Origin: Macrostomum lignano | Lineage: Eukaryota | Length of the DNA: 64,000 nt | NCBI GenBank assembly: GCA_002269645.1 | Contig: NIVC01003858.1 | Location: 9,509-73,508 of the forward strand | Direction of reading: 5' to 3' | Shown here: piece after piece, positions 2-48,650 of the stretch | How positions within the stretch are numbered: the stretch's first letter is position 1 | Layout of the letters: each line of letters starts with the position of its first letter | The notes under the pieces: generated by a model | Database searches by the model: none | What the model saw: only the letters and a program-made list of their open reading frames with translations | Told to the model about the DNA's origin: nothing | Made by a program: the position numbers and the translations under genes

Positions 2-1758
2 TCAAGCTCAGTTCCCAGCCTCCTGGACCGGCTGAAGCCGCCACCAGGCAGCTGGTCCTGCCCGACATGCGCAGTTCAGAACACGAAGGACCAGGCCACG
101 TGTCCCTGCTGCTCCACTGCCAAGCCCGGCGCCCCTGCCGCCTCGGCGAGTCCCGCCACCCACGCCGCTCCGGCCTCGTCAACTGCCACCACGGTGTCTT
201 CTGCTCAGCCGCTGTTCTCCTTCGGTGGAATGTCGTTCGGCGGCGGCAGTCAGCAAGTCAGCAAGCCGACGGCGTCCGCCGGTGCGGGCGCCGCCGCTCC
301 CAGCAGCTCAGCCTCACCCTTTTCCAATTTCTCCTTTGGCTCTTCCGCTAGCAAGCCGGCAGTTTCTACTGCCGCCCCTATTGGCTTGGCCGCAGCTTCA
401 TCATCAGCAGCATCATCAACTGCCGCCGCTCCGGCGCCATTCGCCAGTTTTTCATTCGGCATGCCGCCGAAATCTTCTGCCGCCGCGTCTTCCACCGCCA
501 CTGCCGCTGCTCCCGCCAGTTTTGCCGGCTTCGGCGGCGTCAGCTTTAGCGGGCTGAACTTTGGCTCGTCAAAGTCGCCAGCGGCAACGGCTACCGCTGC
601 TGGTGGGCCTCCGTCGCCGGCTGTTGCTGCAGCCGGCGCTGCGTCCGCCTCTGCCGCTGCTGCTGCTGACGATTCAACTGACAATCCTGAGAGCTTCGAA
701 CCGTCTGTTGAATTTGCGCCCGTGGTTAATCTGCCGGATAAGGTTGGTTTATAATACCGCTAACAAATTCCTTAGGGTCAAGATGTCGTTAATTCGCAAC
801 CGTACCTACAATGAGGGACCCGTTAAGTGCGTTACCGTGACCAGCCAGAATCGCTAAAGAGTAATTGCAAGCAACTCACTAGTGACTCTAGCGACTCTTT
901 GGCGACTCGTGTGACTTTTTAACAACTCAAACCACTGTTATGCGATAGGGAGGCGACTGTTAAGTTAAAAATGCATCACGTGAGTTGCAGAATCGTAAGA
1001 GAGTCACAAAAAAGTTGTCCAATAGTCGTTGCGTTGGCGTTTTAACTTTCTACTAACTCAACAACTAGACTAAATAGAGTTGTTATAAATGCGAAATACG
1101 GTTCTAATTTATAAACTGACGCAGATGCGCTTCTAACGCAACTCGGTGATTCTACAGCGATTCTGGCACGCCTCAGGTACGACTCTACGGCCCCTGTGTC
1201 ATTAAAGATCGAAGCATCCCAGAATCGTTTAGAGTCACTTCTTTCCTATTTTCATCCCCTGCGTTACCTGCAATGACTCTGGCCCGCTTGTTCACCCAGT
1301 ATAAGAGGGGGGGCTCACGTTTTTTATCCATTTTCCTCTCCTCAGTTTGCTAGGGATTAATGAGATAAAATGGGGTTTAGATGATAAAAACTAAAGTATT
1401 TTCGAAGCCATCCATTCCGCATTTAGTTAAACGTATCTTCTCTAATTAAGTATTGAAAATCTGTGAATGACTCGAATCAGCTTACATTATTATTTAAAAT
1501 TCGATCATTTCTCTTAAAGCAGTTAGCTTGTAGAAGCTAAGTATGCTTGCATTCAGTTACTGCCCCTCAGGTTAATTAGTTGTTAGTCATTTATTTAGTT
1601 AGCTATAGTTAATTAGTTTGTTAGTTAGTTAGTCATTTATTTAGTTAGCTATAGTTAATTAGTTTGTTAGTTAGTTAGTCATTTATTTAGTTAGCTATAG
1701 TTAATTAGTCTGTTAGTTAGTCATTTATTTAGTTAGCTATAGTTAATTAGTCTGTTAC

Positions 1759-4800: not shown

Positions 4801-4974
4801 GCTTACCAATCCTTCAGAATTGGCGTCAAATACCCTTTTTTCCTGATCTTTTACGCCTTGTATTTGCTATACTAGCGTACTAAAAGAAATGAATAATAAT
4901 TTATTCTAATTGAATGTGCAGGCAAAGCGAACCAGACGAGCACCAACGGTTCTAATGATGTAATCAGTGACTGA
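2..4974 (+). CDS. RANBP2: RanBP2/Nup358 nucleoporin, 3' part (5' end outside window): join(<2..742,2038..3267,3556..4264,4922..4974)
   Basis: Two RanBP2-type zinc fingers (WSCPTCAVQNTKDQATCPCC), FG/FSF low-complexity tracts and two Ran-binding domains (LPDK|VEVKTGEE...W..RGIGELKIL...R.VMRRDQV.KLCANH). NDLVLV..PSVTDDQIRRARRLKLPDYFYAY resembles the SUMO-E3 internal repeat IR1/IR2. GT-AG junctions are phase-compatible (0,0,1); stop TGA 4972-4974. Confidence 0.9.
820..1290 (+). mobile_element. Unclassified ~0.5-kb dispersed repeat (GACTC/GAGTC-rich), copy in RanBP2 intron
   Basis: Shares blocks (gaatcgct..gagt..tgcaa..aactcactagtgac; gtgagttgcagaatcgtaa; agagtcactt..ttacctg) with ~22240-22600, ~26720-27210 and, on the minus strand, ~54850-55500. 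Confidence 0.7.
1565..1885. repeat. (TTAG)n microsatellite with degenerate larger units, intronic
   Basis: Direct reading of the sequence. Confidence 0.9.
2932..3105 (+). repeat. Coding 30-bp tandem repeat (KDSAAAKDSK-type, about 5 copies) in RanBP2
   Basis: In-frame repeat unit aaagactcggccgccgcgaaggactcaaaggac inside the exon. Confidence 0.9.
3310..3470 (+). mobile_element. Short dispersed repeat family (gtgtacatgcctgac...ctgtacaccctgtgtgagcgtgtg)
   Basis: Related copies at ~7258-7312 (-), ~26125-26215 (+), ~52160-52205 (+) and ~53110-53235 (-). Confidence 0.65.
4311..4830. repeat. 42-bp minisatellite, about 12 copies, in last RanBP2 intron
   Basis: Unit atccttcagaattagcgccaaatacccctgtttagcttacca; ccttc recurs at 4391 and 4433. 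Confidence 0.92.
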
Positions 4975-7362: not shown

Positions 7363-9549
7363 TCAGAGCATCTGTTGATCCGACGAATTCTTCAACGTCG
7401 GCACTCCGTCGTCTTCGCCGACTTCGCTACCGGAAGCTCCGCCGTCCCGATGCTCTCCGTCGTCAGTCAGGTTGCCCTCTGGCGGCTTAAACACAGAGTT
7501 GTCCATCAGCATGTCCTCTTCTGCGTCGCCTGTGCGCTTTCTGGTCTTCTGCTTTTTCTGGCCCAGCTGCATCGGCGAGGCGGCGCCGCTGCGCACCTGG
7601 ATGATCTCCGACAAGTTGCTGGCCGACTGCTGGCTGACTCCGCTCTGTCGAGCTCGCGGATCGCCTTCGTTCAGCGACTTTTCAAATCTGTGGTTATAAA
7701 AATTCGAGTCGTTTTCTTAGTTTGAACATCTGATCCAATCTTGTGTCAACTTTTGGTTTGGCGAACTTGTTACATATATTAATATGGGTAAAATATTCGA
7801 AAAGGTTTATTTTAGGCCATTTTTAGATAGTCTCTTGGAGATTGCTCGAACGCAGCGAATCTTCGTGTGCATAGGACTTGGCGCCCGGTTACAGGTTTGG
7901 CGTCCCCTCCTCGCTACAGGTTTGGCGCCCCCTCCCGCTACAGGTTTGGCGCCCCCTTTTCACAGCAGGTTTGGCGCCCCCTCCTCGCTACAGGTTTGGC
8001 GCCCCCCCCGCTACAGGTTTGGCGCCCCCTTTTCACAGCAGTTTTGGCGCCCCCTCCTCGCTACAGGTTTGGCGCTCCCTCCTCACAGCAGTTTTGGCGC
8101 CCCCTCCCCGCTACAGGTTTGGCGCCCCCTTTTCACAGCAGGTTTGGCGCTCCCTCCTCACAGCAGGTTTGGCGCCCCCTCCCCGCTACAGGTTTGGCGC
8201 CCCCTTTTCACAGCAGGTTTGGCGCTCCCTCCTCACAGCAGGTTTGGCGCCCCCTCCCCGCTACAGGTTTGGCGCCCCCTTTTCACAGCAGGTTTGGCGC
8301 CCCCTCCCCGCTACAGGTTTGGCGCCCCCTTTTCACAGCAGGTTTGGCGCCCCCCCCCCTCACAGCAGGTTTGGCGCCCCCTTCTCACAGCAGGTTTGGC
8401 GACCCCCCTCACAGCAGGTTTAGCGCCCCCTTCTCACAGCAAGTTTGGCGCCCCCTAGCCGCTACAGGTTTGGCGACCCCTTTTCACAGCAGGTTTGGCG
8501 CCCCCTTCTCACAGCAGGTTTGGCGCCCCCCCCCCTCACAGCAGGTTTGGCGCCCCCCCCCTCACAGCAGGTTTGGCGCCCCCTTCTCACAGCAGGTTTG
8601 GCGCCCCCTTCTCACAGCAGGTTTGGCGCCCCCTCCTCACTACAGGTTTGGCGCCCCCTCCTCGCTACAGGTTTGGCGCCCCCCCTCACAGCAGGTTTGG
8701 CGCCCCCTTCTCACAGCAGGTTTGGCGCCCTCCTCACAGCAGGTTTGGCGCCCCCCTCACAGCAGGTTTGGCGAACTTCTCAAAGCAGGTTTGGCGCCCC
8801 CTCACAGCAGGTTTGGCGAACTTCTCAAAGCAGGTTTGGCGCCCCCTCACAGCAGGTTTGGCGCCCCCCCTCACAGCAGGTTTGGCGCCCCCCCTCACAG
8901 CAGGTTTGGCGCCCCCCATCAGAGCAGGTTTGGCGAACTTCTCAAAGCAGGTTTGGCGCCCCCTCACAGCTCACCCAACATTATTGAATTCTCCCGTTCC
9001 GTTGCGACTCCCGGCGACTCCAGCGGCTACGTTATTGCCGCCGCCTCCGCCGCTCCAGTCAATGGCGGCTCCCGCCGACTTTCCCGACTTGCTTTTCGAC
9101 TTGTTGGACTTGTTCTTTGACGACTTCTTCTTGTGCCTCTGCTGCTTCTGCTTGCTATCAGATCCGGGCTCAGTGTCCAGAGCCACTTTGTCCGGCTGCA
9201 GCTGCTGCTTCTGCTGCCCTGTGGACAGGTCTCCGGCCTTGAAATCCGCGCCCGAGGCAGCCACTTTGTTATCGCGCGTTGATTGTTCTGACTTCCTGCG
9301 CTGCCGCATCTCGCTGCTGGCGCTGGCCAGGTTCTTGCGGCGCTGCTTTGTCCTGGAAGAGTAGAAGTGGCAGGTATAGAACCCACTGAGTTCGTCATCA
9401 TCATCATCAGTACCAACATTCTTTTCATCGTTATCATTAGCATCATCATCATCGTCATTGTCGTCGTTAAGCATCATTATCTCTATTATCACCATCATTA
9501 TCATCATTACCATCAACATTATCAACATCATCATCATTATCATCACTTT

Positions 9550-9587
<38 letters not shown>

Positions 9588-9688
9588 TATCATCATCATC
9601 ATCATCACTTTATCATTATCATCATCACTTTTATCATCATCATCATCATCATCATCACCATCATCATCATCATTATCATCATCACTTT

Positions 9689-9740
<52 letters not shown>

Positions 9741-12700
9741 CTTTATCATTATCATCATCACTTTTATCATCATCATCACTTTATCATTATCATCATCACT
9801 TTTATCATCATCATCACTTTATCATTATCATCATCACTTTTATCATCATCATCATCATCATCATAATCACCATCATCATCATCATTATCATAATTATCAT
9901 CATCATCACTATCATCATCATCATTATCGTCACTTTATCAGCATCACCATCAACATCATCATTATCATCACCTTATCATCATCATCACCATCATCATCAT
10001 CATTATCATCATCACTTTATCATCATTATCATTATCATTATCATCACTTTATCATCATCATCACCATCATCATCATCATTATCATCACTTTATCATCATC
10101 ATCACCATCAGCATCATCATCTTTATCATCACTTTATCATCATCACCATCAACATCATCATTATCATCACCTTATCATCATCATCACCATCATAGTCATC
10201 ATTATCATCATTATCATCACTTTATCATCATTATCACCATCATCATCATCATTATCATCACTTTATCATCATCATCACCATCATAATTATCATTATCATC
10301 ATCACTTTATCATCATTATCACCATCATTATCATCACTTTATCATCATCATCACCATCATCATCATCATTCTCATCATTATCATCATCACCATCATCATC
10401 ATCATTCTCATCATTATCATCATCACCGTCATCATCATCATTGTCATCATCATATTTTTCATCTCTAAAAGCATAAATATCACAGAAAGCATTATAATAT
10501 TTTCACAACTCACTGATGATGTCTCAAAGCCAAGGCCACAATAATGAGAACCAGAGTGCCCAGCACGAATATTGGCACAATCACTTTATTGGCGAGCACT
10601 GGCGGTGGTACAGAATAGAAAATGGCGTTGATGTAGACCAGACTGTAGCCCACGGAAGTTGAAACGGATTCGCGTTGTTTCTGGGCAATTTCTAGGAAAT
10701 GGAAGGAGAAAAACAAATATACACGCAATCTATCAACTACTTATTTTGCTTAGTGTTCTTGATTTCTAAGAAATCTAAATAAAAAACTTTTCTCTTTTTG
10801 CCAACAGGGTGCCCATTTTCGTATGGCGCTAATTTTGGGGGCACTCATTTTCCTGTGGCGCTCATTTTCCTGTGGCGCTCATTTTCCTGTGACGCTCATT
10901 TTCCTGTGACGTTCATTTTCCTGTGGCGCTCATTTTCCTGTGGCGCCTATTTTCCTGTGGCGCTCATTTTCCTGTGGCGCTTATTTTCCTGTGGCGCTAA
11001 TTTTCCTGTGGCGCTAATTTTCCTGTGGCGCTTATTTTCCTGTGGCGCTAATTTGGGGGTGGCGCTCTTTTCCTGTGGCGCATATTTTCCTGTGGTGCTA
11101 ATTTGGGGGTGGCGCCCTTTTCCTGTGGCGCTAATTTGCGGGCGCTCATTTTCTTGTGACGCTCATTTTCCTGTGACGTTCATTTTCCTGTGGCGCTCAT
11201 TTTCCTGTGGCGCTTATTTTCCTGTGGCGCTCATTTTCCTGTGGCGCTAATTTTCCTGTGGCGCTAATTTTCCTGTGGCGCTTATTTTCCTGTGGCGCTA
11301 ATTTGGGGGTGGCGCTCTTTTCCTGTGGCGCTTATTTTCCTGTGGCGCTAATTTGGGGGTGGCGCCCTTTTCCTGTGGCGCTAATTTGCGGGCGCTCATT
11401 TTCTTGTGACGCTCATTTTCCTGTGACGTTCATTTTCCTGTGGCGCTCATTTTCCTGTGGCGCTTATTTTCCTGTGGCGCTCATTTTCCTGTGGCGCTTA
11501 TTTTCCTGTGGCGCTAATTTTCCTGTGGCGCTAATTTTCCTGTGGCGCTTATTTTCCTGTGGCGCTAATTTGGGGGTGGCGCTCTTTTCCTGTGGCGCTT
11601 ATTTTCCTGTGGCGCTAATTTGGGGGTGGCGCCCTTTTCCTGTGGCGCTAATTTGCGGGCGCTCATTTTCTTGTGGCGCTAATTTGAGAGCGCCTATTTT
11701 CCTGTGGCGCTATTTGAAGGCGCCCTATTTTCTTTGTGGCGCTCATTTGGATTCGCCAAGTTTTTTGTGGCGCTAATCGGTCCTCGAAAGCTCCATTTAA
11801 GCGCCGTATCCTGATATTAAAATTTTGCAATGCCATGTAGTCTAAAATGACAAGCTGATAATAGAAATTGCCATAAGCAACTTGCCTGCAACCGCAGCAG
11901 CTGGAAGGCGAACCCGGCTCGATCCAACTGTGAACTCAATGCCAACGCGAACGTTGAGGTAGCGAGATTTGTAATTTACCGGATATCCGGCGCTAATTAC
12001 CACCGCTGAAGCTGTGAAACTCCTGAAATTTGGAAAGGAGCAGAAAAAGGTATTGATACGCGTCGTGTACTACTCTCAGCAGCTTAATCTCTAGGGAGGG
12101 TGCCAGATCATGAAGTAAGAGTACCAGATTCTCTAAGAGTGCCAGATTCTCTAAGAGTGCCAGATTCTCTAAGAAGAGGCCAGATTCTCTAAGAAGAGTG
12201 TCAGATTCTCTAAGAGTGCCAGATTCTCTAAGAGTGCCAGATTCTCTAAGAAGAGGCCAGATTCTCTAAGAAGAGTGCCAGATTCTCTAAGAAGAGGCCA
12301 GATTCTCTAAGAAGAGTGTCAGATTCTCTAAGAGTGCCAGATTCTCTAAGAGTGCCAGATTCTCTAAGAAGAGGCCAGATTCTCTAAGAAGAGTGCCAGA
12401 TTCTCTAGGAGTGCCAGATTCTCTAGGAAGAGTGCCAGATTCTCTAAGAAGAGGCCAGATTCTCTAAGAAGAGGCCAGATTCTCTAAGAAGAGTGCCAGA
12501 TTCTCTAAGAAGAGTGCCAGATTCTCTAGGAAGAGTGCCAGATTCTCTAAGAAGAGGCCAGATTCTCTAAGAAGAGTGCCAGATTCTCTAAGAGTGCCAG
12601 ATTCTCTAAGAAGAGGCCAGATTCTCTAAGAAGAGTGTCAGATTCTCTAAGAGTGCCAGATTCTCTAAGAGTGCCAGATTCTCTAAGAAGAGGCCAGATT

Positions 12701-13353
12701 CTCTAAGAAGAGTGTCAGATTCTCTAAGAGTGCCAGATTCTCTAAGAGTGCCAGATTCTCTAAGAAGAGGCCAGATTCTCTAAGAAGAGTGCCAGATTCT
12801 CTAGGAGTGCCAGATTCTCTAGGAAGAGTGCCAGATTCTCTAAGAAGAGGCCAGATTCTAAGAAGAGTGCCAGTTTTTATATATCTAGATAGAAGGGTTT
12901 AGAAATGCATATGGTCGGGGAACTTTCGCGAACGTGGCATACTGGGGCCAATCCTGTTTCAATACACAAGCTAGCTCACTCACACATCCGATGTCGAGTT
13001 GATGGCGCAGGTGACAAAATTCGCTCTGTTCGAACAGTAGTCCTTTAGTCCGGTCAGCATTGCCGACTGCAGCTTTGTCTGTTGGTTCTCCTGCTCCCAC
13101 TGTATTTGTATAGAATTGTTTCTAGTCAATTTGAGCCACAAGTTTCACAGATTACACTACTGATTATAAGTGCGAGTAGCTAGTAAAGATTTTTTATATT
13201 ATTTTAAAAACAATAGTGTTCAGTTTACAGAAAAAAAGCCAAATGCTGTGGGTTTGCATGGTTTCCCTGCCTGCATCAGTCAGTCTCACTGTTGGTCTGA
13301 GTTTCTGTCTCCGTACAAGCGTGTCTTAGTGTCGTAATGTCTATCTGTTTTTG

Positions 13354-13384
<31 letters not shown>

Positions 13385-13465
13385 GTGTCTGTCTGTGTGT
13401 CTGTCTGTCTTTGTGTCTGTCTGTCTGTCTGTCTGTGTGTCTGTCTGTCTGTCTGTCTGTCTTTG

Positions 13466-13532
<67 letters not shown>

Positions 13533-13593
13533 ACGTGTGTCTGTCTGTCTGTCTGTCTGTGTGTGTGTCTGTCTGTGTGTCTGTCTGTCTTTG

Positions 13594-13636
<43 letters not shown>

Positions 13637-13653
13637 GTGTCTGTCTGTCTTTG

Positions 13654-13748
<95 letters not shown>

Positions 13749-13753
13749 ACGTG

Positions 13754-13804
<51 letters not shown>

Positions 13805-13909
13805 GTGTCTGTCTGTCTGTCTATCTGTCTGTGTGTCTGTCTGTGTGTCTGTCTGTCTGTCTATCTGTCTGTCTGTGTGTCTGTCTGTCTGTCTGTGTGT
13901 CTGTCTGTG

Positions 13910-13944
<35 letters not shown>

Positions 13945-13949
13945 ACGTG

Positions 13950-14012
<63 letters not shown>

Positions 14013-14073
14013 ACGTGTGTCTGTCTGTCTGTCTGTCTGTGTGTGTGTCTGTCTGTGTGTCTGTCTGTCTTTG

Positions 14074-14104
<31 letters not shown>

Positions 14105-14133
14105 GTGTCTGTCTGTGTGTCTGTCTGTCTTTG

Positions 14134-14228
<95 letters not shown>

Positions 14229-14233
14229 ACGTG

Positions 14234-14284
<51 letters not shown>

Positions 14285-14389
14285 GTGTCTGTCTGTCTGT
14301 CTATCTGTCTGTGTGTCTGTCTGTGTGTCTGTCTGTCTGTCTATCTGTCTGTCTGTGTGTCTGTCTGTCTGTCTGTGTGTCTGTCTGTG

Positions 14390-14424
<35 letters not shown>

Positions 14425-14429
14425 ACGTG

Positions 14430-14460
<31 letters not shown>

Positions 14461-14465
14461 ACGTG

Positions 14466-14498
<33 letters not shown>

Positions 14499-14600
14499 GC
14501 CTGTCTGTCAGACAGTTTGTATGCTTGTATATACTTACCAGTGTCACTTGATTCATGTAGAATTGCAAGAACACATCATTACCAGCACTAACAAGTGCAG
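7363..14600 (-). CDS. Uncharacterised single-pass membrane protein, 3' part: complement(join(7363..7687,8975..9352,10514..10691,11886..12022,12984..13099,14539..14600?)); upstream exons not resolved
   Basis: Six exons chain with matching phases (0,2,1,2,2) and strong acceptors (e.g. ttctactcttccag, ctttccaaatttcag). Hydrophobic span [20 protein letters not shown] is followed by basic RHHQTKQRRK. One junction needs a GC donor (AG|GCAAGT, 11885-11884). The start of the 14539 exon is uncertain (14600 or 14744). Confidence 0.75.
7876..8968. repeat. GC-rich ~20-22-bp minisatellite (caggtttggcgccccc...), intronic
   Basis: Direct reading; fills the intron 7688-8974. Confidence 0.92.
9398..10452. 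repeat. Imperfect (CAT)n trinucleotide array, intronic
   Basis: Direct reading. Confidence 0.95.
10810..11776. repeat. 17-bp minisatellite (ctcattttcctgtggcg), intronic
   Basis: ctcatt recurs at 10861 and 10878; variants are arranged in higher-order blocks. Confidence 0.92.
12118..12873. repeat. 18/21-bp minisatellite (gccagattctctaag[aag]agt), intronic
   Basis: Direct reading. Confidence 0.92.
13337..14510. repeat. (TCTG)n microsatellite array with a 480-bp higher-order duplication
   Basis: Variant gtac marks at 13531/14011, 13747/14227 and 13943/14423. Confidence 0.93.
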
Positions 14601-15290: not shown

Positions 15291-18200
15291 CTGAGAGGTC
15301 AGAAGCTACCAGTACATATGTAGTTTAATAAAAAACGTTTACTCCATTCTTTATTGCATCCCCAACAATGGGGCGCAGATTTCTACGAGTGGTTCACATG
15401 TAATATTTTCTGGCTAATGAAAGCAAGTCCTAATTTTATTGGCTGTTTAAATTTGTATAAATTCTAGATAAACAGAACTTTCTTTTTTAACTTTAAAAAT
15501 TAAATTCTCAATGAAATTTCTGTATTTGAACTCGTATTCGTAGCGATCGTTAGTTGTTTGTCTATCAACTTGCCAGACTATACTAGTAGTACAGTAGCAT
15601 TGTAAAATTGTTCATCATGCATTTCTGTGACCGTGTCTGAAAAGTACTGCGTATATTTAATTAGGATTTTTCATTTGTTGACCATGGGCGCACAACGATA
15701 ATACGAAGCGGCGGTCCGCTGGAGGTTGATCAGTTCGGGCGTGGAACACGAAATGTGACTGGCTAGATTGTCCAATATTCAATTGCTTTCAACTTGATCG
15801 ATCAGCTGCTGTCCTGCGCTGCAGCGATGGGTGCCGGAGAAGGATCAATCTTGTAATTAAATAATTAGAAAACACTGTTTTAAACATCACGCTGCTGTAT
15901 CTTTGCGACTTCACCAAGTCGACCATTATTTGCTTTGTGTGAAGCTTTGTGTGCTAATTGTTCAAATGACATTTGAATTTGGAAAATCCTGACGGGACAA
16001 CAAAAATGTTATGAAGGCAGCAGAGAAATTCAGTTCTATTGCCAATCTCTGAGCTGCGTTTCCGACATGCATGTACAGGTGCTGTAAATGTAGGGTTCAA
16101 ATTGTCATTAGGCGCAGTTTTATGTAGATATTGCTTCACCGACAGGCGACAGCAGTGATTATATAAGCTATATGAATTTCTTTTATTTGTCTAGTCTGAC
16201 TGATTACTGCTGCTGCTGAGTATTGGAAATATCGATGACGTTAACCGGCTATAGTAAAAGGCCACAAGATACATGTTTCAACAAAATCAATATTTACTAT
16301 ATACTATACACGTACTTATGTCTTATTCTGAGCATCCTAAGTAGTGATGATGCAACAAACAAGCTAAGCTACATGTATATATATTTATTTAACAACCTGC
16401 AGGCTGCATGGCAGCCAATTGATATGGTGCAAGCTATAGAAATTGAATAGATTAATCGAGTAGTAGATAAGTACGAGAATAGAAGGACTGCAGCTGCAGA
16501 TTGTAATGCATTGATGCACGAGTGGCCTTGGCTGACCTTAACAAAATGGACTTAAAATTAAAATAATACCAAAACTTACACATTTATTAAAACAAAAATA
16601 AACAGTGTAAAGCAAGGTTTTTGCACTCGCATAAAATTAAACTTCTTTATTACAAGCTGTATAAAAATTAATCAAGTTAAGATGAACTATAGATAACTAT
16701 TTGCGAAGGATGTGCTGAGTTGTAAAGATAATAAAATTTAAATAGACATGCACTTATTAGTAGTTAACTTGCAGAAGAAAACGAGAAGCTCCCTCTGCCC
16801 CTCTGGTGCAGACTAGCCACACGGCATAGCCATAGGGCTAGGCTTATACGAAAAAGTAGTAACTAATTAAGTAATTCATTAATTTATTCAAGCAAGCTAA
16901 TAATGCTAGGGGCTTAGGGCTAAGCGTTAGGGCCACTAAGCCCTAGGCCTAGGCCGCCTAGGCTAGCCTACCTAGGGGCAGGGCTAAGGCATATTCTATT
17001 GACTCTAATTTATACTTAATACTTCATCTCATAATAATTAATTAGTAACTCAAATAAGGTGTGAGCCTCAACCAATCAACTTATTATTATAGACCCATCC
17101 AAGGCCCCACGGGCAGAGTAGCTTGACTGTAAAAACAGTGTAAAAGTGTTTGCCATTTGACTCTTGCACCACGATGTCGACCCTGGCGGCCTGGCCCTGG
17201 TTTGATTCTGGGTGCTTACATTAAAATGAATTGATTTTGGGGCTTCATGTAGAAAAAATTGGTCTAGGTGGCTAGGTTTCTAAGATTCGACCCACCCCAT
17301 GAGAGCCAACCCCACAGAGTGATTTCAATGGACTAGGTGACTTGCACAGCTTGCAGGTGCATCCTATGCCCTAATCTTGCCTGCATCCTTTTCCCCAACC
17401 CAACCAACTGCCAGTAGACCTAATAGGCCAGGTCTAAAACAGTGAATATTCTTGACATTTTACCATGAGAAAGTTTTGAATTTCTATAGCCATAGGGCCT
17501 ATAATTTATGTCACATCATATATAATTTATGTATATCACATGTAGGCCTATGTCATATATATTGTCTAGTCACTCTAGGCCTAGTGTAGGGTATAGCCTC
17601 AATTATATTAGATTAACAATAGAACTTGCAGTTATACAAATAAATATTTTTGCTTTAAATGTAAAAAACTATATTTATAATCTATAATACTATAAAACTA
17701 GGTACAATTATCATGGTATTATTATAACATAATATAGCATAGGCCCTAACTATAGCCCATAATGATAATGATATTATCATAATAATGATAGTCAATGAAT
17801 AGCAAAAATGAAGAAATATAGTGCGGTATAACAAATTAGCTTTGTAGCCTAGCTTATAACAGTCATATTCTTAAATAAAATAAGTGTTAATATAGCTAAG
17901 CATACAAAAGTCATTTAATGCTAAAGCTAAATAAATATTCTTAAATAAAAGATGACATGAGCCCATTAGGCCTTTAGTATATAATTGCCAAAATATCTAT
18001 TTATCTTGTGCAATTGTTACATTAAAAAAACTTGTTCTAATAGTCATAGTGCCCATTGTGTACTAAAAGTTTTTATCAAAAGGCCTAGGGCCTAGGCCTA
18101 TACTTTGGATCATGTTGAGTGCATGCTAAAATCAAATGTAAGACGAAAAAGCTATTAGACTAGGCAAACTGGCAAAGCCAGAGACAGTATCATGGTTTCA

Positions 18201-18558
18201 TTGAATGTCCTTAAAGATATAGGATACCAAAAGTGTAGGATACTAAAGATTTAAAAATATATATAATATATATAATATAAAATGCATTCTATTTTAAATA
18301 ACAAGTAAGCAATATTTATAAGAATATATATTTAAATAAATAAGAGTAGGGCCTATTAAGAATATTTATAAGAGTATAAGAGTCAAAGTGACTTTCTTTG
18401 GCCACTGGCACTAGAATTAAATATATTATGTATAATGATATGTTATATGTTACGTTATGTTATATTAAATAATGTTTTAAATGGGCTTTTTAGCCAGATT
18501 TAATTATGCACAGCAAAAAAACTTTACATCCAATTTTAATGATATGTGTATTGTATCT

Positions 18559-18651
18559 GTAGATAAATAAAGGTAAATATCAACATGAAGTATTATTTGA
18601 GTTGCCGATGCATTTCGTCCATTTGCATTAGGACATCGTCAGGGTCTTTTT
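18559..18651 (-). ncRNA. Minimal hammerhead-ribozyme-like motif (Penelope-type), copy 1
   Basis: Minus strand reads gacc-CTGACGA-t-gtcc-taatgcaaat-ggac-GAAA-tgca-TC-ggc. Confidence 0.6.
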
Positions 18652-21039
18652 ATTGAGAAACAATTTGAACGAATATTCAGTATATATAGATAGTTGAGAG
18701 TAACAAGAGTAGTTGAATTGAGTTTTTAATTGATGGTTTAAAACTTGTACATAGTAATCAATTATTAATTATTATTATTATCAATTATTATTATTATTAT
18801 CAATTATATCAATTATCAAAAAAGAAGCAAAAGAAACAAACAAGCTAAGCTACATGTATATATATTTATTTAACAACCTGCAGGCTGCATGGCAGCCAAT
18901 TGATATGGTGCAAGCTATAGAAATTGAATAGATTAATCGAGTAGTAGATAAGTACGAGAATAGAAGGACTGCAGCTGCAGATTGTAATGCATTGATGCAC
19001 GAGTGGCCTTGGCTGACCTTAACAAAATGGACTTAAAATTAAAATAATACCAAAACTTACACATTTATTAAAACAAAAATAAACAGTGTAAAGCAAGGTT
19101 TTTGCACTCGCATAAAATTAAACTTCTTTATTACAAGCTGTATAAAAATTAATCAAGTTAAGATGAACTATAGATAACTATTTGCGAAGGATGTGCTGAG
19201 TTGTAAAGATAATAAAATTTAAATAGACATGCACTTATTAGTAGTTAACTTGCAGAAGAAAACGAGAAGCTCCCTCTGCCCCTCTGGTGCAGACTAGCCA
19301 CACGGCATAGCCATAGGGCTAGGCTTATACGAAAAAGTAGTAACTAATTAAGTAATTCATTAATTTATTCAAGCAAGCTAATAATGCTAGGGGCTTAGGG
19401 CTAAGCGTTAGGGCCACTAAGCCCTAGGCCTAGGCCGCCTAGGCTAGCCTACCTAGGGGCAGGGCTAAGGCATATTCTATTGACTCTAATTTATACTTAA
19501 TACTTCATCTCATAATAATTAATTAGTAACTCAAATAAGGTGTGAGCCTCAACCAATCAACTTATTATTATAGACCCATCCAAGGCCCCACGGGCAGAGT
19601 AGCTTGACTGTAAAAACAGTGTAAAAGTGTTTGCCATTTGACTCTTGCACCACGATGTCGACCCTGGCGGCCTGGCCCTGGTTTGATTCTGGGTGCTTAC
19701 ATTAAAATGAATTGATTTTGGGGCTTCATGTAGAAAAAATTGGTCTAGGTGGCTAGGTTTCTAAGATTCGACCCACCCCATGAGAGCCAACCCCACAGAG
19801 TGATTTCAATGGACTAGGTGACTTGCACAGCTTGCAGGTGCATCCTATGCCCTAATCTTGCCTGCATCCTTTTCCCCAACCCAACCAACTGCCAGTAGAC
19901 CTAATAGGCCAGGTCTAAAACAGTGAATATTCTTGACATTTTACCATGAGAAAGTTTTGAATTTCTATAGCCATAGGGCCTATAATTTATGTCACATCAT
20001 ATATAATTTATGTATATCACATGTAGGCCTATGTCATATATATTGTCTAGTCACTCTAGGCCTAGTGTAGGGTATAGCCTCAATTATATTAGATTAACAA
20101 TAGAACTTGCAGTTATACAAATAAATATTTTTGCTTTAAATGTAAAAAACTATATTTATAATCTATAATACTATAAAACTAGGTACAATTATCATGGTAT
20201 TATTATAACATAATATAGCATAGGCCCTAACTATAGCCCATAATGATAATGATATTATCATAATAATGATAGTCAATGAATAGCAAAAATGAAGAAATAT
20301 AGTGCGGTATAACAAATTAGCTTTGTAGCCTAGCTTATAACAGTCATATTCTTAAATAAAATAAGTGTTAATATAGCTAAGCATACAAAAGTCATTTAAT
20401 GCTAAAGCTAAATAAATATTCTTAAATAAAAGATGACATGAGCCCATTAGGCCTTTAGTATATAATTGCCAAAATATCTATTTATCTTGTGCAATTGTTA
20501 CATTAAAAAAACTTGTTCTAATAGTCATAGTGCCCATTGTGTACTAAAAGTTTTTATCAAAAGGCCTAGGGCCTAGGCCTATACTTTGGATCATGTTGAG
20601 TGCATGCTAAAATCAAATGTAAGACGAAAAAGCTATTAGACTAGGCAAACTGGCAAAGCCAGAGACAGTATCATGGTTTCATTGAATGTCCTTAAAGATA
20701 TAGGATACCAAAAGTGTAGGATACTAAAGATTTAAAAATATATATAATATATATAATATAAAATGCATTCTATTTTAAATAACAAGTAAGCAATATTTAT
20801 AAGAATATATATTTAAATAAATAAGAGTAGGGCCTATTAAGAATATTTATAAGAGTATAAGAGTCAAAGTGACTTTCTTTGGCCACTGGCACTAGAATTA
20901 AATATATTATGTATAATGATATGTTATATGTTACGTTATGTTATATTAAATAATGTTTTAAATGGGCTTTTTAGCCAGATTTAATTATGCACAGCAAAAA
21001 AACTTTACATCCAATTTTAATGATATGTGTATTGTATCT

Positions 21040-21132
21040 GTAGATAAATAAAGGTAAATATCAACATGAAGTATTATTTGAGTTGCCGATGCATTTCGTC
21101 CATTTGCATTAGGACATCGTCAGGGTCTTTTT
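21040..21132 (-). ncRNA. Minimal hammerhead-ribozyme-like motif, copy 2 (left arm of a 93-bp inverted repeat)
   Basis: Same motif as copy 1; reverse complement of 21300-21392. Confidence 0.6.
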
Positions 21133-21299
21133 ATTGAGAAACAATTTGAACGAATATTCAGTATATATAGATAGTTGAGAGTAACAAGAGTAGTTGAATT
21201 GAGTTTTTAATTGATGGTTTAAAACTTGTACATAGTAATCAATTATTAATTATTATTATTATCAATTATTATTATTATTATCAATTATATCAATTATCA

Positions 21300-21392
21300 A
21301 AAAAGACCCTGACGATGTCCTAATGCAAATGGACGAAATGCATCGGCAACTCAAATAATACTTCATGTTGATATTTACCTTTATTTATCTAC
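21300..21392 (+). ncRNA. Minimal hammerhead-ribozyme-like motif, copy 3 (right arm of the inverted repeat)
   Basis: CTGACGA 21309-21315, stem II gtcc/ggac 21317-21334, GAAA 21335-21338, palindromic ATGCAT stem III, putative cleavage after C21344. Stem I is only 2 bp, so it is weak. Confidence 0.6.
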
Positions 21393-21954: not shown

Positions 21955-24904
21955 ATGGCTGGTCGCCCACCCAACAGCGATGATGGCACAGTGTTCAAGC
22001 TTGTTGTAGTGGGAAATGGTGGCGTTGGGAAAAGCGCTTTGACAATTCAGTACTTCCAGAAGATGTTTGTGCAAGATTATGATCCCACGATTGAGGACTC
22101 TTATATCCAGTTTAAGATGATTGATAACGAATGGTACTTGCTTGATGTGCTTGATACAGCAGGTAAGTTCGCTCTGATTTTTTGAAATATCAATAGTTTA
22201 GTTGATAGTTGGCAAAGGTCACTAAGTGTGCACTGAAAACGTTACTATGATAAAAATCGCTGAAGAGTCATCGCAAACAACTCACTAGTGACCTCGATCT
22301 AGGAGTCTAGGGACTCTAGGCCGACTCCTGAAGCCTTTTGACGGCTCAAACGACTGCAATGCAACGGGTTGGCAACTGTTGAGTCATGGACATGAGCGCA
22401 TAACGTGAGTTGCAGAATCGTAAAAGGGTTGCTGCAGACGTCCTAAATTGACTTTTGACGACTTGTACCGTGACGTCTCTTCGTTTAGAGCCGTTAAAAG
22501 TCACTTCTTTCCTACGGTATTTTACCTGTGTTACCTGTAACGACTCTGAGGCGATGCAAGTGGCTCTGGGACGCTTCCTGGCCTAGATAGCTACCGTTTT
22601 CATCGGGCAGTCATTGACTTGATTTGCTGCCACAGCACACGTACTTTTACAATAAAAAATTCAGGGTCACTGTACCAAATTTGCATACTTCGGGGTTAAC
22701 TGTCACTTTGTGGTTGTACATGCTGGTCTAAATCTGTTCTAATCTGACATTGAACTCATTATTAATCTGTGATGACAACTTTGATGCCAAAAACCTAGGA
22801 TAATTAGCATTTATATCAACGATTTGCAATGACTTACCTCCAGGACAAGAGGAGTTCTCAGCCATGCGAGAGCAGTACATGCGCAAAGGCGACGGCTTTC
22901 TGTTAGTCTATTCCGTTACTGATCGAAAAAGTTTCGAAGATATTCGACATTTTCATACGCAAATTTTGCGCGTTAAAGATCGCGATAATTATCCAATGAT
23001 TCTACTGGCTAACAAGGTGGATATCGTGCACCTGAGGCAGGTGTTTGAGGACGAGGGCAAAGCCCTGGCAAGTCAACTTAAAGTGAGTTCGTTAGATTAA
23101 ATATTTCCTCATCTTAATTGAATCAGTCTGTGACTGACTGCGTGCCATAGAGAGAAGAGGGAGAGAGGCGAGATGAGAGAAGAGAGAGAAAAGGGGGAGA
23201 GGCGAGATGAGAGAAGAAAGAGGAAGGTGGGGGAGAGGCGAGATAAGAGAAGAAAGAGGAAGGTGGGGGAGAGGCGAGATGAGGGAAGAAAGAGGAAGGT
23301 GGGGGAGAGGCGAGATGAGGGAAGAAAGAGGAAGGTGGGGGAGAGGCGAGATGAGGGAAGAAAGAGGAAGGTGGGGGAGAGGCGAGATGAGGGAAGAAAG
23401 AGAAAGGGGGAGAGGCAAGATAAGAAAGGAAAGAGGAGGGGGTGAGAGACGAGTTGAGTGAGGAAAGGGGGAGAGGATAGGAGAGGCGAGATAAGAGAGG
23501 AGGAGAAAGAGACAAGAGAGCTGAGAAGAAAAACATTGAGCGGGCGGGGTTGCTATTGTGATGTTTCCCGGACCCGAGGGCCGGATAGAGAGGCTTTGCG
23601 GGCCGCATGTGGCTTGCTGACCTCAAATTTTGACAGAAATAATAGTTAATAGAAGTAGCAGTAGTAATAGTTTACTGGCTCAGAAAAACTTTTCTGTTCT
23701 GCAAGCATAAGTTGATGTATTTGATAGTAGGAATTTTTTCATTTCAACTACGACTATATAGTCTGTCTAAACTGCAGTTTAACCTATCAAATGTAATGAG
23801 CTAATATTGTTAAACTAATGTGCAAATTATGTTAGAATTTGGCTGCTTGAATTCACTTATCGCTGAGATCAAAGCTACTCGTAACAAATTGTTTGTGCAG
23901 AAGAAATGTTTATTATAAACTGTTGAGTGCTTTTTCGGCAGAAGCCACGCTTTTCTTGGCAAACCGGAAGTTGGCCCTACTAGCTTTTGCGAAAAGAAAA
24001 CTTAGATACCTGCAATATAGAAGGATTGGTGCTTGGTCTTGGTGCTTCTTAGCTTTTAATAATCTAGTCAGGAAGGTGTAGTTCAGTTAACTGAATAACT
24101 GGGTTTCCGGCTGACCTGGCTTTCTTGCAACTACTGCATTTAATACAGATAACAGATGTCCTGTAGTGTTAATTATAGTGTTAACTTTTATTTGAAAATA
24201 ATGTAAGTCATGTCGGAATAGGAGTGCTGAAATATTTCATACACCACAAAGAATTACCCATCAAGCTAATAAAAATTTCCTATCGAGGCCTTAACAAACG
24301 GCTATTAAACCTCAAAATCGCTCATCAAAGCCACTTAAAATCGCCGATAAAAGCCCCAAGAATCGCCCGTCAAAGCCCCAACAATCGTCCATCAAAGCCC
24401 CAACAATCGCCCGTCAAAGTCCTAAGAATCGCCAATCAAAGCCCTAAGAATCGCCAATCAAAGTCTCAAAAATTACCCGTCAAAACCCCAAGAATCGCCA
24501 ATCAAAGTCTCAAAAATTACCCGTCAAAACCCCAAGAATCGCCAATCAAAGTCTCAAAAATTACCCGTCAAAACCCCAAGAATCGCCAATCAAAGTCTCG
24601 AGAATTACCCGTCAAAACCCCAAGAATCGCCAATCAAAGTCTCGAGAATTACCCGTCAAAGCCCCGAGAATCGCCCGTCAAAGCTCCAACGATCGATCAT
24701 AAAAATCTCAAGAATCGGTTATCGAACCCCCGCCCTCAGATCCAGTACATCGAGACCAGCGCCAAAGATCCGCCATTCAATGTTGATGAAGCGTTCAACA
24801 CAATTGTACGAATTGTTCGAAATCAGCCACGCGAGGCGGCACCGGCGAAAGAGAAAAAACGGCGCAGAGGCGCGGGGCGCAAACTCAAATGCGAGCTCAT
24901 GTAA
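21955..24904 (+). CDS. MRAS: M-Ras (R-Ras3)-like small GTPase, copy 1, 203 aa: join(21955..22162,22844..23082,24740..24904)
   Basis: [38 protein letters not shown] and ETSAKDPP (the DPP insert is M-Ras-typical); polybasic tail and CAAX CELM; phase-compatible GT-AG introns; 612 nt. Confidence 0.92.
22240..22600 (+). mobile_element. GACTC-rich dispersed repeat copy in M-Ras copy 1 intron 1
   Basis: Shares blocks with 820-1290 and 26720-27210. Confidence 0.65.
23155..23520. repeat. Polypurine 36-bp minisatellite, M-Ras copy 1 intron 2
   Basis: Unit ggggagaggcgagatgagggaagaaagaggaaggtg. Confidence 0.88.
24330..24720. repeat. 22/44-bp minisatellite directly upstream of M-Ras exon 3
   Basis: Unit caaaaccccaagaatcgccaatcaaagtctcaaaaattacccgt; caaaac at 24481 and 24525. 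Confidence 0.85.
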
Positions 24905-46130: not shown

Positions 46131-46819
46131 ATGATGGGATTCAGGGAATGGCATTTCAGGGAATGGAGTACCGGTAATGGGAATTCTTCCCCTTTCTCCT
46201 CCAGAGGAGGAGTTGGCCTCGTATATACTAAAAATGAGTTGTCTGTATGTATCTATCTAGCTATGCGATAGATTTCAGAAAAAATGGCTCAACCGATTTT
46301 CTTCAAACTTGCACCATTCGATCAGAAATTTTCCTGGGACGGTACATGCATCTTGGCTAAGAAATTGCTCAGTATTAAAGGGATTAAATATTCGAAAAAC
46401 AAGCTTTTTGAAAAGGTCAAGCAAACTTTTCGACTTGAAATGCATTGTAAGAATGCTAGATAAAAACCTGACTGACTGAATTTCAATTCTGATAAAGATT
46501 GCATCACAACAAGTTGAAAACAGTGCCGAAGAAATGCACACACAACTTGATTGAAATTGCGTAACCATATTGCTAACTTAAATTGAGACTGATACTGGCT
46601 GACTGAGAAATTGATTATGTCATAACTTTTTACTCTAACCGACTTGCTGTAAGAATTGAATTATAAGGGCCACAATTCATGTTCTCCAATTGACAAGAGA
46701 TAGTCTAGATGCGAACAGACTGGACTGCTAATGCAGCGACCTGGGTTCGAATCATAGTAGTGCAAAAAGATTATTTTATTAAAACACCTTAAAAACAAAA
46801 TGCTAAACACAAAAAAGCA

Positions 46820-48330: not shown

Positions 48331-48419
48331 TTTCAAAAGTAAAAGTAAGCGTCATGCCAATTTTAAAGGAGCCACTATAGAGCTAAGAAAATTGTTGCAC
48401 TAGCTACTTATTGTCTGGT

Positions 48420-48650
48420 GGGTGCTTACTATTTGGGGATGCTTGCTATCTGGGGGATGCTTGCTATCTGGGAGGGGGATGCTTGCTGTCTGGGGGTGCT
48501 TGCTATTTGAGGGATGCTTGCTATCGGGAGGATGCTTGCTATCTGGGGGATGCTTGCTATTTGGGGGATGCTTGCTATTTGGGGGATGCTTGCTATCTGG
48601 GGGATGCTTGCTATCTGGGGGATGTTTGCTATCTGGGGGATGCTTGCTGT
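48420..48650. repeat. 18-bp minisatellite (gggggatgcttgctatct) inside Helitron; also 51195-51295 and 51800-51930
   Basis: Direct reading. Confidence 0.92.

What the first reader, a model, noticed from the sequence alone, without database searches (positions are those of the whole stretch)
18559..21392. Hammerhead-ribozyme-flanked 2481-nt unit with an inverted terminal ribozyme copy: candidate non-autonomous Penelope/retrozyme-like element
Seen: the motif CTGACGA-t-gtcc(10-nt loop)ggac-GAAA-tgca-TC occurs twice on the minus strand exactly 2481 nt apart and once on the plus strand, forming a 93-bp inverted repeat (21040-21132 / 21300-21392) around a 167-nt spacer. Established: Penelope-like elements carry minimal hammerheads with a palindromic stem III (here ATGCAT) in pseudo-LTRs, and often insert as partial tandems with an inverted end. 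Inference: cleavage at both direct copies would release a ~2.5-kb non-coding monomer, much larger than typical animal retrozymes. The spacer may also hold a decayed GIY-YIG C-terminus (KPSI.TQ-like, needing two frameshifts).
Basis: partly seen in the sequence, partly recalled or inferred. Interest (0 to 1): 0.72.

Follow-up and report, generated by a model that had tools for sequence, protein, structure and literature searches.

The report
Non-coding Penelope-like retroelement with hammerheads
An animal genome carries a very young, protein-less mobile element, two identical 2.5-kb copies in a row plus a short flipped copy, each with the miniature self-cutting RNA motif typical of Penelope-like retrotransposons; it is a credible but fairly ordinary new member of a known class.

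Summary
An exact two-copy head-to-tail array with period 2481 spans 16354-21306 (4953 nt, two units minus 9 nt). A 93-nt inverted copy (21300-21392) is joined to it through a 7-nt microhomology. The hammerhead-like motif occurs at 18607-18642(-), 21088-21123(-) and 21309-21344(+).

The motif meets every published hallmark of the minimal hammerheads of Penelope-like elements (PLEs): an extra U after A9, a G10.1-C11.1 pair, the palindromic AUGCAU helix III and a 2-bp helix I. A descriptor built from those rules is expected only about 0.007 times per 64 kb. No Rfam hammerhead model detects the motif.

A relaxed scan of metagenome contigs recovered a genuine PLE family (an RT plus GIY-YIG ORF, with the hammerhead 47 nt after its stop). 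Its copies end about 51 or 85 nt after the cut site and are often heavily 5'-truncated. The inverted copy here (-9 to +48) fits that pattern.

The best reading is a recent insertion of a non-autonomous PLE-type element. No other genomic copies or autonomous partner could be searched, and cleavage is untested. Interest is moderate.

The parts
16354..18834 (-). Unit copy 1 (2481 nt). In the sense orientation (minus strand) it is the downstream, complete copy.
   Evidence: Exact identity with 18835-21306. Sharp boundary with unrelated left flank at 16353|16354. No ORF >52 aa. No Pfam domain in six frames.
18835..21306 (-). Unit copy 2 (2472 nt). It is the upstream copy in sense orientation and lacks the first 9 nt of the unit (5'-truncated by 9 nt).
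   Evidence: 100% identity over 2472 nt. Identity stops at 21306, where the inverted piece takes over.
21300..21392 (+). Inverted 93-nt copy. It runs from 9 nt upstream of the hammerhead to 48 nt after its predicted cut site. It is read as a heavily 5'-truncated copy in opposite orientation at the 5' end of the array.
   Evidence: 100% complementary to 21040-21132 and 18559-18651. Its end at +48 matches the 3' ends (+49 to +56) of a genuine PLE family.
21300..21306 (.). 7-nt microhomology (AAAAAGA) shared by the end of copy 2 and the start of the inverted copy. It is the reverse complement of TCTTTTT at 21126-21132.
   Evidence: Read directly from the sequence.
21088..21123 (-). Minimal hammerhead motif, copy 2: CUGACGA-U-GUCC-(10 nt)-GGAC-GAA-AUGCAU-C. 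Predicted cut between 21088 and 21087.
   Evidence: Hallmarks as in PMC4209133.
18607..18642 (-). Minimal hammerhead motif, copy 1. Predicted cut between 18607 and 18606.
21309..21344 (+). The same hammerhead motif in the inverted copy. Predicted cut after C21344.
18816..18845 (.). Purine-rich tract on the + strand (TCAAAAAAGAAGCAAAAGAAACAAACAAGC), pyrimidine-rich in the sense RNA. It contains the copy-to-copy junction. Both outer ends of the array (16354 and 21306) map within this tract, 9 nt apart.
   Evidence: An array of two units minus 9 nt has a chance of about 0.8% of falling within 9 nt of a whole number of units.

Best explanation
The locus is one recent retrotransposition event of a non-coding, non-autonomous Penelope-like element whose sense strand is the minus strand of the window. 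Shown: two identical head-to-tail copies (the upstream one 5'-truncated by 9 nt), a 93-nt copy in inverted orientation at the 5' end joined by a 7-nt microhomology, and a PLE-type minimal hammerhead in each copy. There is no reading frame, no RT or endonuclease remnant, and sharp junctions with unrelated flanking DNA. Inferred: an RT-endonuclease supplied in trans by an autonomous PLE nicked both strands of the target. One nick primed cDNA synthesis 48 nt downstream of a hammerhead, which is the usual PLE 3' end, and gave the short inverted copy. The other nick primed a long cDNA that ran through two units of a longer-than-unit RNA. The two cDNAs, or a single cDNA snapping back on itself, paired through AAAAAGA/TCTTTTT. 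By analogy with other PLEs, the hammerhead is a weak ribozyme that acts as a dimer or with protein help. Its palindromic AUGCAU forms helix III between two copies. It may process multimeric transcripts but need not define the ends of the inserted DNA.
For: The array is exact and has sharp ends. [quoted passage not shown] That paper also reports pairs of minimal hammerheads on opposite strands 100-700 bp apart; here the gap is 185 nt. The descriptor is expected 0.007 times per window. The anatomy equals that described for PLEs: a full copy preceded by a 5'-truncated tandem copy, with an inverted 5'-truncated copy at the 5' end (PMC8557442; PMC8969392). My own control was a relaxed scan that returned a 20-copy family. 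In that family an RVT_1 + GIY-YIG ORF is followed 47 nt later, on the same strand, by a hammerhead of the same build. Its copies end at +49 to +56 or +83 to +89 after the cut, and many are 5'-truncated to 0-200 nt upstream of the hammerhead. The inverted copy here spans -9 to +48. The PAc element cuts and extends both strands, and its RT starts internally downstream of the hammerhead (PMC11167929). There is no coding capacity. TAGGCC/GGCCTA is 17-20x enriched in the unit against the rest of the window, a composition foreign to the neighbourhood.
Against: Only one locus could be examined. No other copy, consensus, empty site or autonomous partner could be searched, because the host genome is not in any available collection. 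All three hammerheads are identical, so there is no covariation. No Rfam hammerhead model matches, even at E<=10 on 111 nt. The active fold is not the predicted minimum: monomer +1.4 against -7.6 kcal/mol, double hammerhead -16.1 against -23.3. The 3' end of the direct array (16354) is not at the canonical position. It lies 228 nt upstream of where the next cut site would be. There is no target-site duplication, and the target is not AT-rich as reported for PAc.
Confidence: 0.7

Rival explanations
1. Local DNA-level rearrangement. A resident single-copy segment holding an old solo PLE hammerhead was duplicated in tandem. A fold-back template switch during replication or repair (microhomology-mediated) then added the 86-nt inverted piece. 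No retrotransposition of a 2.5-kb element ever took place.
For: The 7-nt microhomology at the inversion junction and the lack of a target-site duplication are typical of replication-based template switching. The array's left end is not a canonical PLE 3' end. No second locus could be shown.
Against: This needs three independent junctions and the loss of the original right-hand junction. It would be a coincidence that the inverted piece starts 9 nt before the hammerhead and stops at +48, where genuine PLE copies end. The unit's oligonucleotide make-up differs sharply from the surrounding 59 kb.
Confidence: 0.15
2. Retrozyme-type cycle, a variant of the main explanation rather than an exclusive rival. 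The hammerheads cut a multimeric transcript into 2481-nt monomers, and a host ligase circularises them. A PLE RT then copies the circle by rolling-circle reverse transcription and stalls when it meets its own start after whole turns.
For: The array is two units minus 9 nt, and both ends lie in the same 30-nt tract. The chance of falling within 9 nt of a whole number of units is about 0.8%. Circular templates were proposed for PLEs and for animal retrozymes (PMC4209133; PMC7229834). The circular fold is somewhat more stable than shuffles (z = -3.5).
Against: Known animal retrozymes have 150-450 nt units with canonical, efficient type I hammerheads. For PAc, hammerhead cleavage was not needed for insertion, and uncut RNA was the main substrate. 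A defined transcription start next to the RT start site would also give whole-unit lengths. The fraction of paired bases (62%) is not rod-like.
Confidence: 0.2
3. Chance motif in an assembly artefact. The perfect tandem and the inverted end are mis-assembly, and the hammerhead resemblance is accidental.
For: Identity is 100% over 2472 nt, the host assembly is unknown, and complex PLE insertions are known to trouble assemblies.
Against: The strict descriptor is expected 0.007 times per window. The same build was recovered next to a real RT-GIY-YIG ORF. A 93-nt inverted arm with a microhomology junction in the interior of a contig is not a typical assembler error.
Confidence: 0.05

Closest known systems
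Canonical endonuclease-positive Penelope-like elements (Penelope/Poseidon, Neptune, Nematis clades), including the D. virilis Penelope hammerhead variant
   Same: Head-to-tail (pseudo-LTR) arrangement. An inverted 5'-truncated copy at the 5' end. A minimal type I hammerhead on the sense strand with a bulged base after A9, G10.1-C11.1, a palindromic helix III and a 2-3 bp helix I. A 3' end about 50 nt after the cut site (for the inverted copy).
   Different: No RT-GIY-YIG ORF or remnant. The unit is 2.48 kb of AT-rich non-coding DNA with a GC-richer core. Helix II is only 4 bp with a 10-nt loop. The direct array ends at a non-canonical position.
Animal non-LTR retrozymes (Cervera & de la Pena 2020; proposed in a 2026 preprint to be non-autonomous PLE derivatives)
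   Same: Non-coding, low GC, tandem copies each with a type I hammerhead, presumed to be mobilised in trans by PLEs.
   Different: The unit is 2481 nt against 150-450 nt. The hammerhead is the minimal PLE type, not the canonical efficient type with loop-loop contacts. There are only two copies, and no evidence of circular RNA.
Non-autonomous PLEs such as MRC1 and other non-autonomous Chlamys elements of Chlamydomonas (Craig et al. 2021)
   Same: [quoted passage not shown]
   Different: Those belong to the Chlamys clade, which generally lacks canonical hammerheads, and they share their 3' ends with known autonomous partners. Here the partner is unknown and a hammerhead is present.
   Same: The same hammerhead build: CUGAUGA-A-GUCC(G)...(C)GGAC-GAAA plus a short palindrome, with a 3-bp helix I. 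Many copies are reduced to the hammerhead plus about 50-90 nt.
   Different: No sequence similarity beyond the ribozyme core. That family has an intact RT + GIY-YIG ORF ending 47 nt upstream of the hammerhead.

Membership tests
Hammerhead ribozyme (type I) | Conserved core CUGANGA ... GAAA ... U-H at the junction of three helices | tested here: met
   CUGACGA / GAAA / U-C are present in the right order and spacing at all three sites.
Hammerhead ribozyme (type I) | Match to the curated covariance models (Rfam Hammerhead_1 and related families) | tested here: not met
   No hammerhead family at gathering score on the window. None at E<=10 on 5.8 kb or on 111 nt.
Hammerhead ribozyme (type I) | Stable helices I, II and III in the active fold | tested here: inconclusive
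   Helix II is 4 bp, helix I is 2 bp, and helix III is 1 bp as a monomer or 6 bp (AUGCAU) as a dimer. The active monomer fold is +1.4 against an MFE of -7.6 kcal/mol. The double hammerhead is -16.1 against a dimer MFE of -23.3.
Hammerhead ribozyme (type I) | Self-cleavage at H17 | not testable with these tools
   Needs in vitro transcription or mapping of RNA ends.
Minimal hammerheads of Penelope-like elements (Cervera & de la Pena 2014) | Extra nucleotide between A9 and G10.1, and a G10.1-C11.1 pair | tested here: met
   CUGACGA-U-GUCC...GGAC-GAAA. The criteria are taken from PMC4209133.
Minimal hammerheads of Penelope-like elements (Cervera & de la Pena 2014) | Palindromic positions 15.2-16.2 / loop 3, allowing a dimeric helix III | tested here: met
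   A-UGCA-U forms the palindrome AUGCAU.
Minimal hammerheads of Penelope-like elements (Cervera & de la Pena 2014) | Occurrence in direct repeats about 3 kb apart, or as pairs on opposite strands 100-700 bp apart | tested here: met
   Direct copies are 2481 nt apart. The opposite-strand pair is 185 nt apart.
Minimal hammerheads of Penelope-like elements (Cervera & de la Pena 2014) | Families of genomic copies with covariation | not testable with these tools
   The three copies are identical, and the host genome is not in any collection.
Penelope-like element (autonomous) | Single ORF with a PLE reverse transcriptase and a GIY-YIG endonuclease | tested here: not met
   The longest ORF is 52 aa. 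Pfam on six frames at E<=10 finds no RVT or GIY-YIG. tblastn with the L013 RT-EN protein gives a best E of 5.5 over 9 residues.
Penelope-like element (insertion anatomy) | Tandem or partial-tandem copies (pseudo-LTR) with an inverted 5'-truncated copy at the 5' end | tested here: met
   compared with PMC8557442 and PMC8969392.
Penelope-like element (insertion anatomy) | 3' terminus a few tens of nt downstream of the hammerhead (RT start site), with an optional 30-40 nt tail | tested here: inconclusive
   Met by the inverted copy (+48). The control family ends at +49 to +56 and +83 to +89, and PAc starts about +85 to +92. Not met by the direct array, which ends 228 nt upstream of the next cut site.
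Non-autonomous PLE derivative | Multicopy family sharing its terminal segment with an autonomous PLE of the same genome | not testable with these tools
   No access to the host assembly. There is no PLE and no second copy within the 64-kb window.
Animal non-LTR retrozyme | Short tandem units (150-450 nt) with canonical type I hammerheads, expressed as circular RNA | tested here: not met
   The unit is 2481 nt and the hammerhead is the minimal type. Size range from PMC7229834. Circular RNA is not testable.

The most novel reading that the evidence does not exclude
The 2481-nt non-coding unit may be a 'giant retrozyme', an intermediate between full PLEs and the 150-450-nt animal retrozymes. It would propagate through a hammerhead-processed circular RNA. 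The array length of two units minus 9 nt, with both ends in the same 30-nt tract, would be the footprint of rolling-circle reverse transcription that stalls each time the enzyme returns to its own start.
Probability: 0.15. Interest if true: 0.6.

Novelty: new member of a known kind. Interest (0 to 1): 0.38.

Why it matters
If confirmed as a family, this would be a recently active, kilobase-sized, protein-less passenger of Penelope-like elements in an invertebrate that appears not to be represented in the protein collection searched. It would add a size class between autonomous PLEs and the small retrozymes that a 2026 preprint derives from PLE pseudo-LTRs. Because the copies are identical, every junction of one insertion event is preserved: the tandem junction, the microhomology at the inversion, and one canonical and one non-canonical end. 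That is useful raw material for the still unsettled PLE integration mechanism (cutting and extension of both strands, internal RT start, possible circular template). It also lies 563 bp upstream of the start codon of an M-Ras-like gene, so it may affect that gene's promoter region.

Tried and rejected
- **Rfam.** Gathering threshold on the whole window, E<=10 on 5.8 kb, and E<=10 on 111 nt. No hammerhead or other ribozyme family matched.
- **Other copies through exact-protein look-ups.** I tried the 52-aa ORF of the unit and the neighbouring GPCR ORF. Neither is on record.
- **Exact-type hammerhead pattern** in metagenome and viral contigs: 0 hits.
- **Host identification.** The best relative of the ANKUB1-like gene is 53% identical (Capitella). 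The species is therefore absent from the protein collection, and the host can only be called an invertebrate animal.
- **GIY-YIG or RT relics.** None by Pfam on six frames or by tblastn with a real PLE protein.
- **Short similarities between the right flank and the unit.** A 13-nt direct match and a roughly 23-nt inverted match looked suggestive, but local alignment scores do not exceed shuffled controls. Rejected as chance.
- **tRNA or SINE-like head:** none.
- **Internal terminal inverted repeats or long internal repeats in the unit:** none of note.
- **Lunse et al. 2017** (dimer cleavage of PLE hammerheads) is not held in the library. Literal sequence searches of the literature gave only unrelated primers.
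- **Other families among the 62 relaxed-pattern loci.** Most lie in prokaryote-like coding contigs or lack RT context and were not pursued.
- **The small hairpin at the +48 end** (UAUC-UACA-GAUA followed by an A/C-rich stretch) recalls the AC-rich stem-loop of PAc, but it is too small to count as evidence.
Full report
**1. What is in the sequence**

The 36-nt string CTGACGATGTCCTAATGCAAATGGACGAAATGCATC occurs at 18607-18642 and 21088-21123 on the minus strand, and at 21309-21344 on the plus strand. The 93-nt arms 21040-21132 and 21300-21392 are perfectly complementary with 167 nt between them. The arm 18559-18651 is a third copy of the same arm.

- Comparing the window with itself at an offset of 2481 gives an unbroken identity run from 16354-18825 to 18835-21306.
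- blastn of the unit gives 100% over 2481 and 2472 nt, plus the 93-nt inverted match, and nothing else in 64 kb.
- The locus is thus left flank | copy 1 (16354-18834) | copy 2 (18835-21306, lacking 9 nt) | inverted 93 nt (21300-21392, sharing AAAAAGA with the end of copy 2) | right flank.
- The shared AAAAAGA is the reverse complement of TCTTTTT at 21126-21132, so the inversion junction is a 7-nt microhomology.
- The flanks are unrelated to the unit. A few short look-alike stretches do not beat shuffled controls.
- I see no target-site duplication.

**2. Is the motif more than chance?**

A loose core pattern is not (7 matches, 7.6 expected). I wrote a descriptor from the published rules for minimal hammerheads:
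- CUGANGA, then 0-1 extra nt;
- helix II of at least 4 bp closed by G10.1-C11.1;
- GAAA;
- a palindromic helix III core, then U, then H.

It hits only these three sites. It is expected 0.007 times per 64 kb, with 1 of 300 first-order Markov simulations giving any hit. The three sites are copies of one sequence, so this is one independent event. It could still arise by chance somewhere in a large genome, and the context has to carry the rest of the argument.

**3. Fit to the literature on Penelope-like elements (PLEs)**

Cervera & de la Pena 2014 (PMC4209133) list features that emerged beyond their search descriptor:
- a conserved G10.1-C11.1 pair;
- palindromic 15.2-16.2 / loop 3.

For D. virilis Penelope they also describe a 2-bp helix I and a small palindromic helix III. 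They report motifs about 3 kb apart in pseudo-LTRs, and pairs on opposite strands 100-700 bp apart.

The motif here reads CUGACGA-U-GUCC-(10 nt)-GGAC-GAA-A-UGCA-U-C. Its helix I is CC/GG. The direct copies are 2481 nt apart, and the opposite-strand pair is 185 nt apart. Every one of those features is met.

Craig et al. 2021 (PMC8557442) and Goubert et al. 2022 (PMC8969392) describe PLE insertions as follows:
- a full copy preceded by a 5'-truncated tandem copy;
- often an inverted 5'-truncated copy at the 5' end;
- an optional 30-40-bp tail.

Taking the minus strand as sense, because the two array hammerheads lie on it, the locus has exactly this order: inverted short copy, then a copy truncated by 9 nt, then a full copy.

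**4. A control made here**

The exact-type pattern found nothing in metagenome or viral contigs. A relaxed pattern with a free helix III tetranucleotide returned 62 loci. Twenty of them are one repeat family.
- In L013 an 808-aa open frame carries RVT_1 (E 5e-10) followed by GIY-YIG (E 8e-4). The hammerhead lies 47 nt after its stop, on the same strand.
- L062 shows the same GIY-YIG-then-hammerhead order.
- That hammerhead has the same build as ours: a 1-nt bulge after A9, GUCC(G)/(C)GGAC, a minimal palindrome and a 3-bp helix I.
- Aligning the 20 copies shows that similarity stops either 49-56 nt or 83-89 nt after the predicted cut, which is a tail of about 34 nt.
- Several copies are 5'-truncated to between 0 and 200 nt upstream of the hammerhead.

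The in vitro study of the Anolis element PAc (PMC11167929) found that reverse transcription starts internally, about 85-92 nt after the hammerhead cut site. It found two start sites a tail-length apart, and both DNA strands were cut and extended.

The inverted copy in the window runs from -9 to +48 relative to its hammerhead. That is what a heavily 5'-truncated PLE copy with a canonical 3' end looks like. I regard this as the strongest evidence that a PLE-type reverse transcriptase made this locus.

**5. Coding capacity**

- The unit has no ORF longer than 52 aa.
- The six frames with stops masked hit no Pfam family at E<=10 apart from one meaningless DUF match.
- tblastn with the L013 RT-EN protein finds nothing in the element or anywhere in the window.

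The idea was reasonable as to position, because in real PLEs the endonuclease ends just upstream of the hammerhead.

The unit has its own composition. GC ranges from 19 to 47% in 150-nt bins. TAGGCC/GGCCTA is 17-20 times more frequent than in the other 59 kb.

**6. What does not fit**

- No Rfam hammerhead model sees the motif, even on 111 nt at E<=10.
- The active monomer fold is predicted at +1.4 kcal/mol against an MFE of -7.6. The double-hammerhead fold with the 6-bp AUGCAU helix III is -16.1 against -23.3 for the best dimer. This agrees with the reported weak, dimer- or protein-dependent activity of PLE hammerheads, but it is not positive evidence of cleavage.
- The direct array does not end at a canonical 3' end. 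Its sense 3' end (16354) lies 228 nt upstream of where the next cut site would be.
- The DNA ends of the array do not coincide with the cleavage sites. Nothing shows that the ribozyme-cut 2481-nt monomer was the template. For PAc, uncut RNA was the main substrate.
- One regularity remains unexplained. Both array ends fall 9 nt apart in the same purine-rich tract (+ strand 18816-18845), so the array is two units minus 9 nt. A random length would come this close to a whole number of units about 0.8% of the time. This points either to a defined RNA 5' end next to the RT start, or to rolling-circle copying of a circular RNA that stalls at its own start. I cannot tell these apart.

**7. Mechanism proposed**

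Shown: the anatomy, the identity of the copies, the microhomology and the lack of coding capacity.

Inferred:
- A PLE enzyme supplied in trans nicked both strands of the target.
- One nick primed at +48 and produced the 93-nt cDNA.
- The other nick primed in the pyrimidine-rich tract of a longer-than-unit (or circular) RNA and produced 4953 nt.
- The two 3' ends paired through AAAAAGA/TCTTTTT. Equally possible, the long cDNA snapped back on its own TCTTTTT 167 nt upstream and copied 86 nt of itself.

The perfect identity of all copies shows that they arose in one recent event.

**8. Rivals**

- A purely DNA-level tandem duplication with a fold-back template switch would explain the microhomology and the missing target-site duplication. 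It leaves the -9 to +48 extent of the inverted piece and the foreign composition as coincidences. I give it 0.15.
- A retrozyme-type circular-RNA cycle is a variant of the main explanation (0.2, not exclusive).
- A chance motif in a mis-assembly gets 0.05.

**9. Context**

The window is from an animal genome that is very rich in minisatellites. Its recognisable genes are:
- RanBD1-domain ORFs at 2023-4332;
- an M-Ras-like first coding exon at 21955-22185(+), 563 bp to the right of the element;
- an ANKUB1-like ORF whose best relative, from Capitella, is 53% identical;
- a rhodopsin-type GPCR.

The species is not in the protein collection searched. Exact-protein look-ups of two window ORFs in the assembly index also found nothing. 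For these reasons copy number, consensus, covariation and the autonomous partner could not be addressed.

**10. Verdict**

It is corrected on three points:
- the extent of the structure;
- the GIY-YIG relic, which is not supported;
- the link between the cleavage sites and the DNA ends, and the retrozyme label.

Non-autonomous PLEs, minimal PLE hammerheads and this insertion anatomy are all described already, so I rate it a new member of a known kind with moderate interest (0.38). It would rise if a circular 2.5-kb RNA or a multicopy family with an autonomous partner were shown.

Noticed in passing
window 16915-16950, 17493-17580, 18081-18095 (and +2481 in copy 2): The hexamers TAGGCC and GGCCTA (core of the palindrome TAGGCCTA) occur 8 times each in the 2481-nt unit (3.2 per kb). 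In the other ~59 kb of the window they occur 0.14-0.19 times per kb. They may be remnants of an internal short repeat or a binding motif. Their function is unknown.
   Followed up: partly
window 21955-22185 (+) and 24224-24904 (+): An M-Ras-like gene lies here. Exon 1 matches solved M-Ras structures at E 4.6e-26. The later ORF carries the ...[10 protein letters not shown]... segment and a C-terminal CELM CAAX box. The element ends 563 bp upstream of its start codon, with the plus-strand hammerhead copy facing the gene.
   Followed up: partly
window 18816-18845: Both outer ends of the array map 9 nt apart within one purine-rich tract, so the array is two units minus 9 nt. This is unexplained. 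It could reflect a defined RNA 5' end beside the RT start, or rolling-circle copying of a circular template.
   Followed up: partly
loci L013, L062 and 18 further metagenome loci (L001, L003, L008-L011, L019, L020, L023, L026, L027, L034, L046, L047, L052, L054, L058, L061): A PLE family with an RVT_1 + GIY-YIG ORF has a minimal hammerhead 47 nt after the stop codon. Its copies show two classes of 3' ends, about +51 and about +85 after the cut, which is a 34-nt 'tail' containing a GUUUCC/GGAAAC hairpin. Many copies are strongly 5'-truncated. In L013 an unrelated 806-aa open frame follows the element.
   Followed up: partly
locus L039 (1969 nt, 27% GC): A GIY-YIG ORF (E 1.3e-8) lies 485 nt upstream of a hammerhead-like motif with a palindromic UAUA helix III, on the same strand. 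It was not determined whether this is a PLE or a phage/intron-type endonuclease context.
   Followed up: no
window 1-64000, e.g. 4347-4835, 7892-8965, 9395-10453, 10814-11685, 13338-14509, 60409-62390: The window has an exceptional density of mini- and microsatellite arrays (53 TRF rows with score >=200). The same 23-nt unit forms arrays at 46818-48337 and 49397-51700. Each is followed by an 18-nt TCTGGGGGATGCTTGCTA array (48414-48656, 51791-51939), which suggests a segmental duplication of about 2.6-3 kb.
   Followed up: no
window 194-754 and 2023-4332 (+): Two RanBD1 domains (E ~4e-36 each) sit in FG/alanine-rich ORFs of a RanBP2/Nup-like gene. The peptide SSAQPLFSFGGMSFGGGSQQVSKPTASAGAGAAAPSSSASP recurs in the ORFs at 194-754 and 2023-3294, which indicates an internal duplication.
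   Followed up: no
window 21041-21052 (minus strand), i.e. +37 to +48 after the hammerhead cut: The inverted copy ends in the loop of a small hairpin (UAUC-UACA-GAUA), followed by an A/C-rich stretch ACAAUACACAUAUCA. This faintly recalls the AC-rich stem-loop where the PAc reverse transcriptase starts. It is too small to count as evidence.
   Followed up: partly
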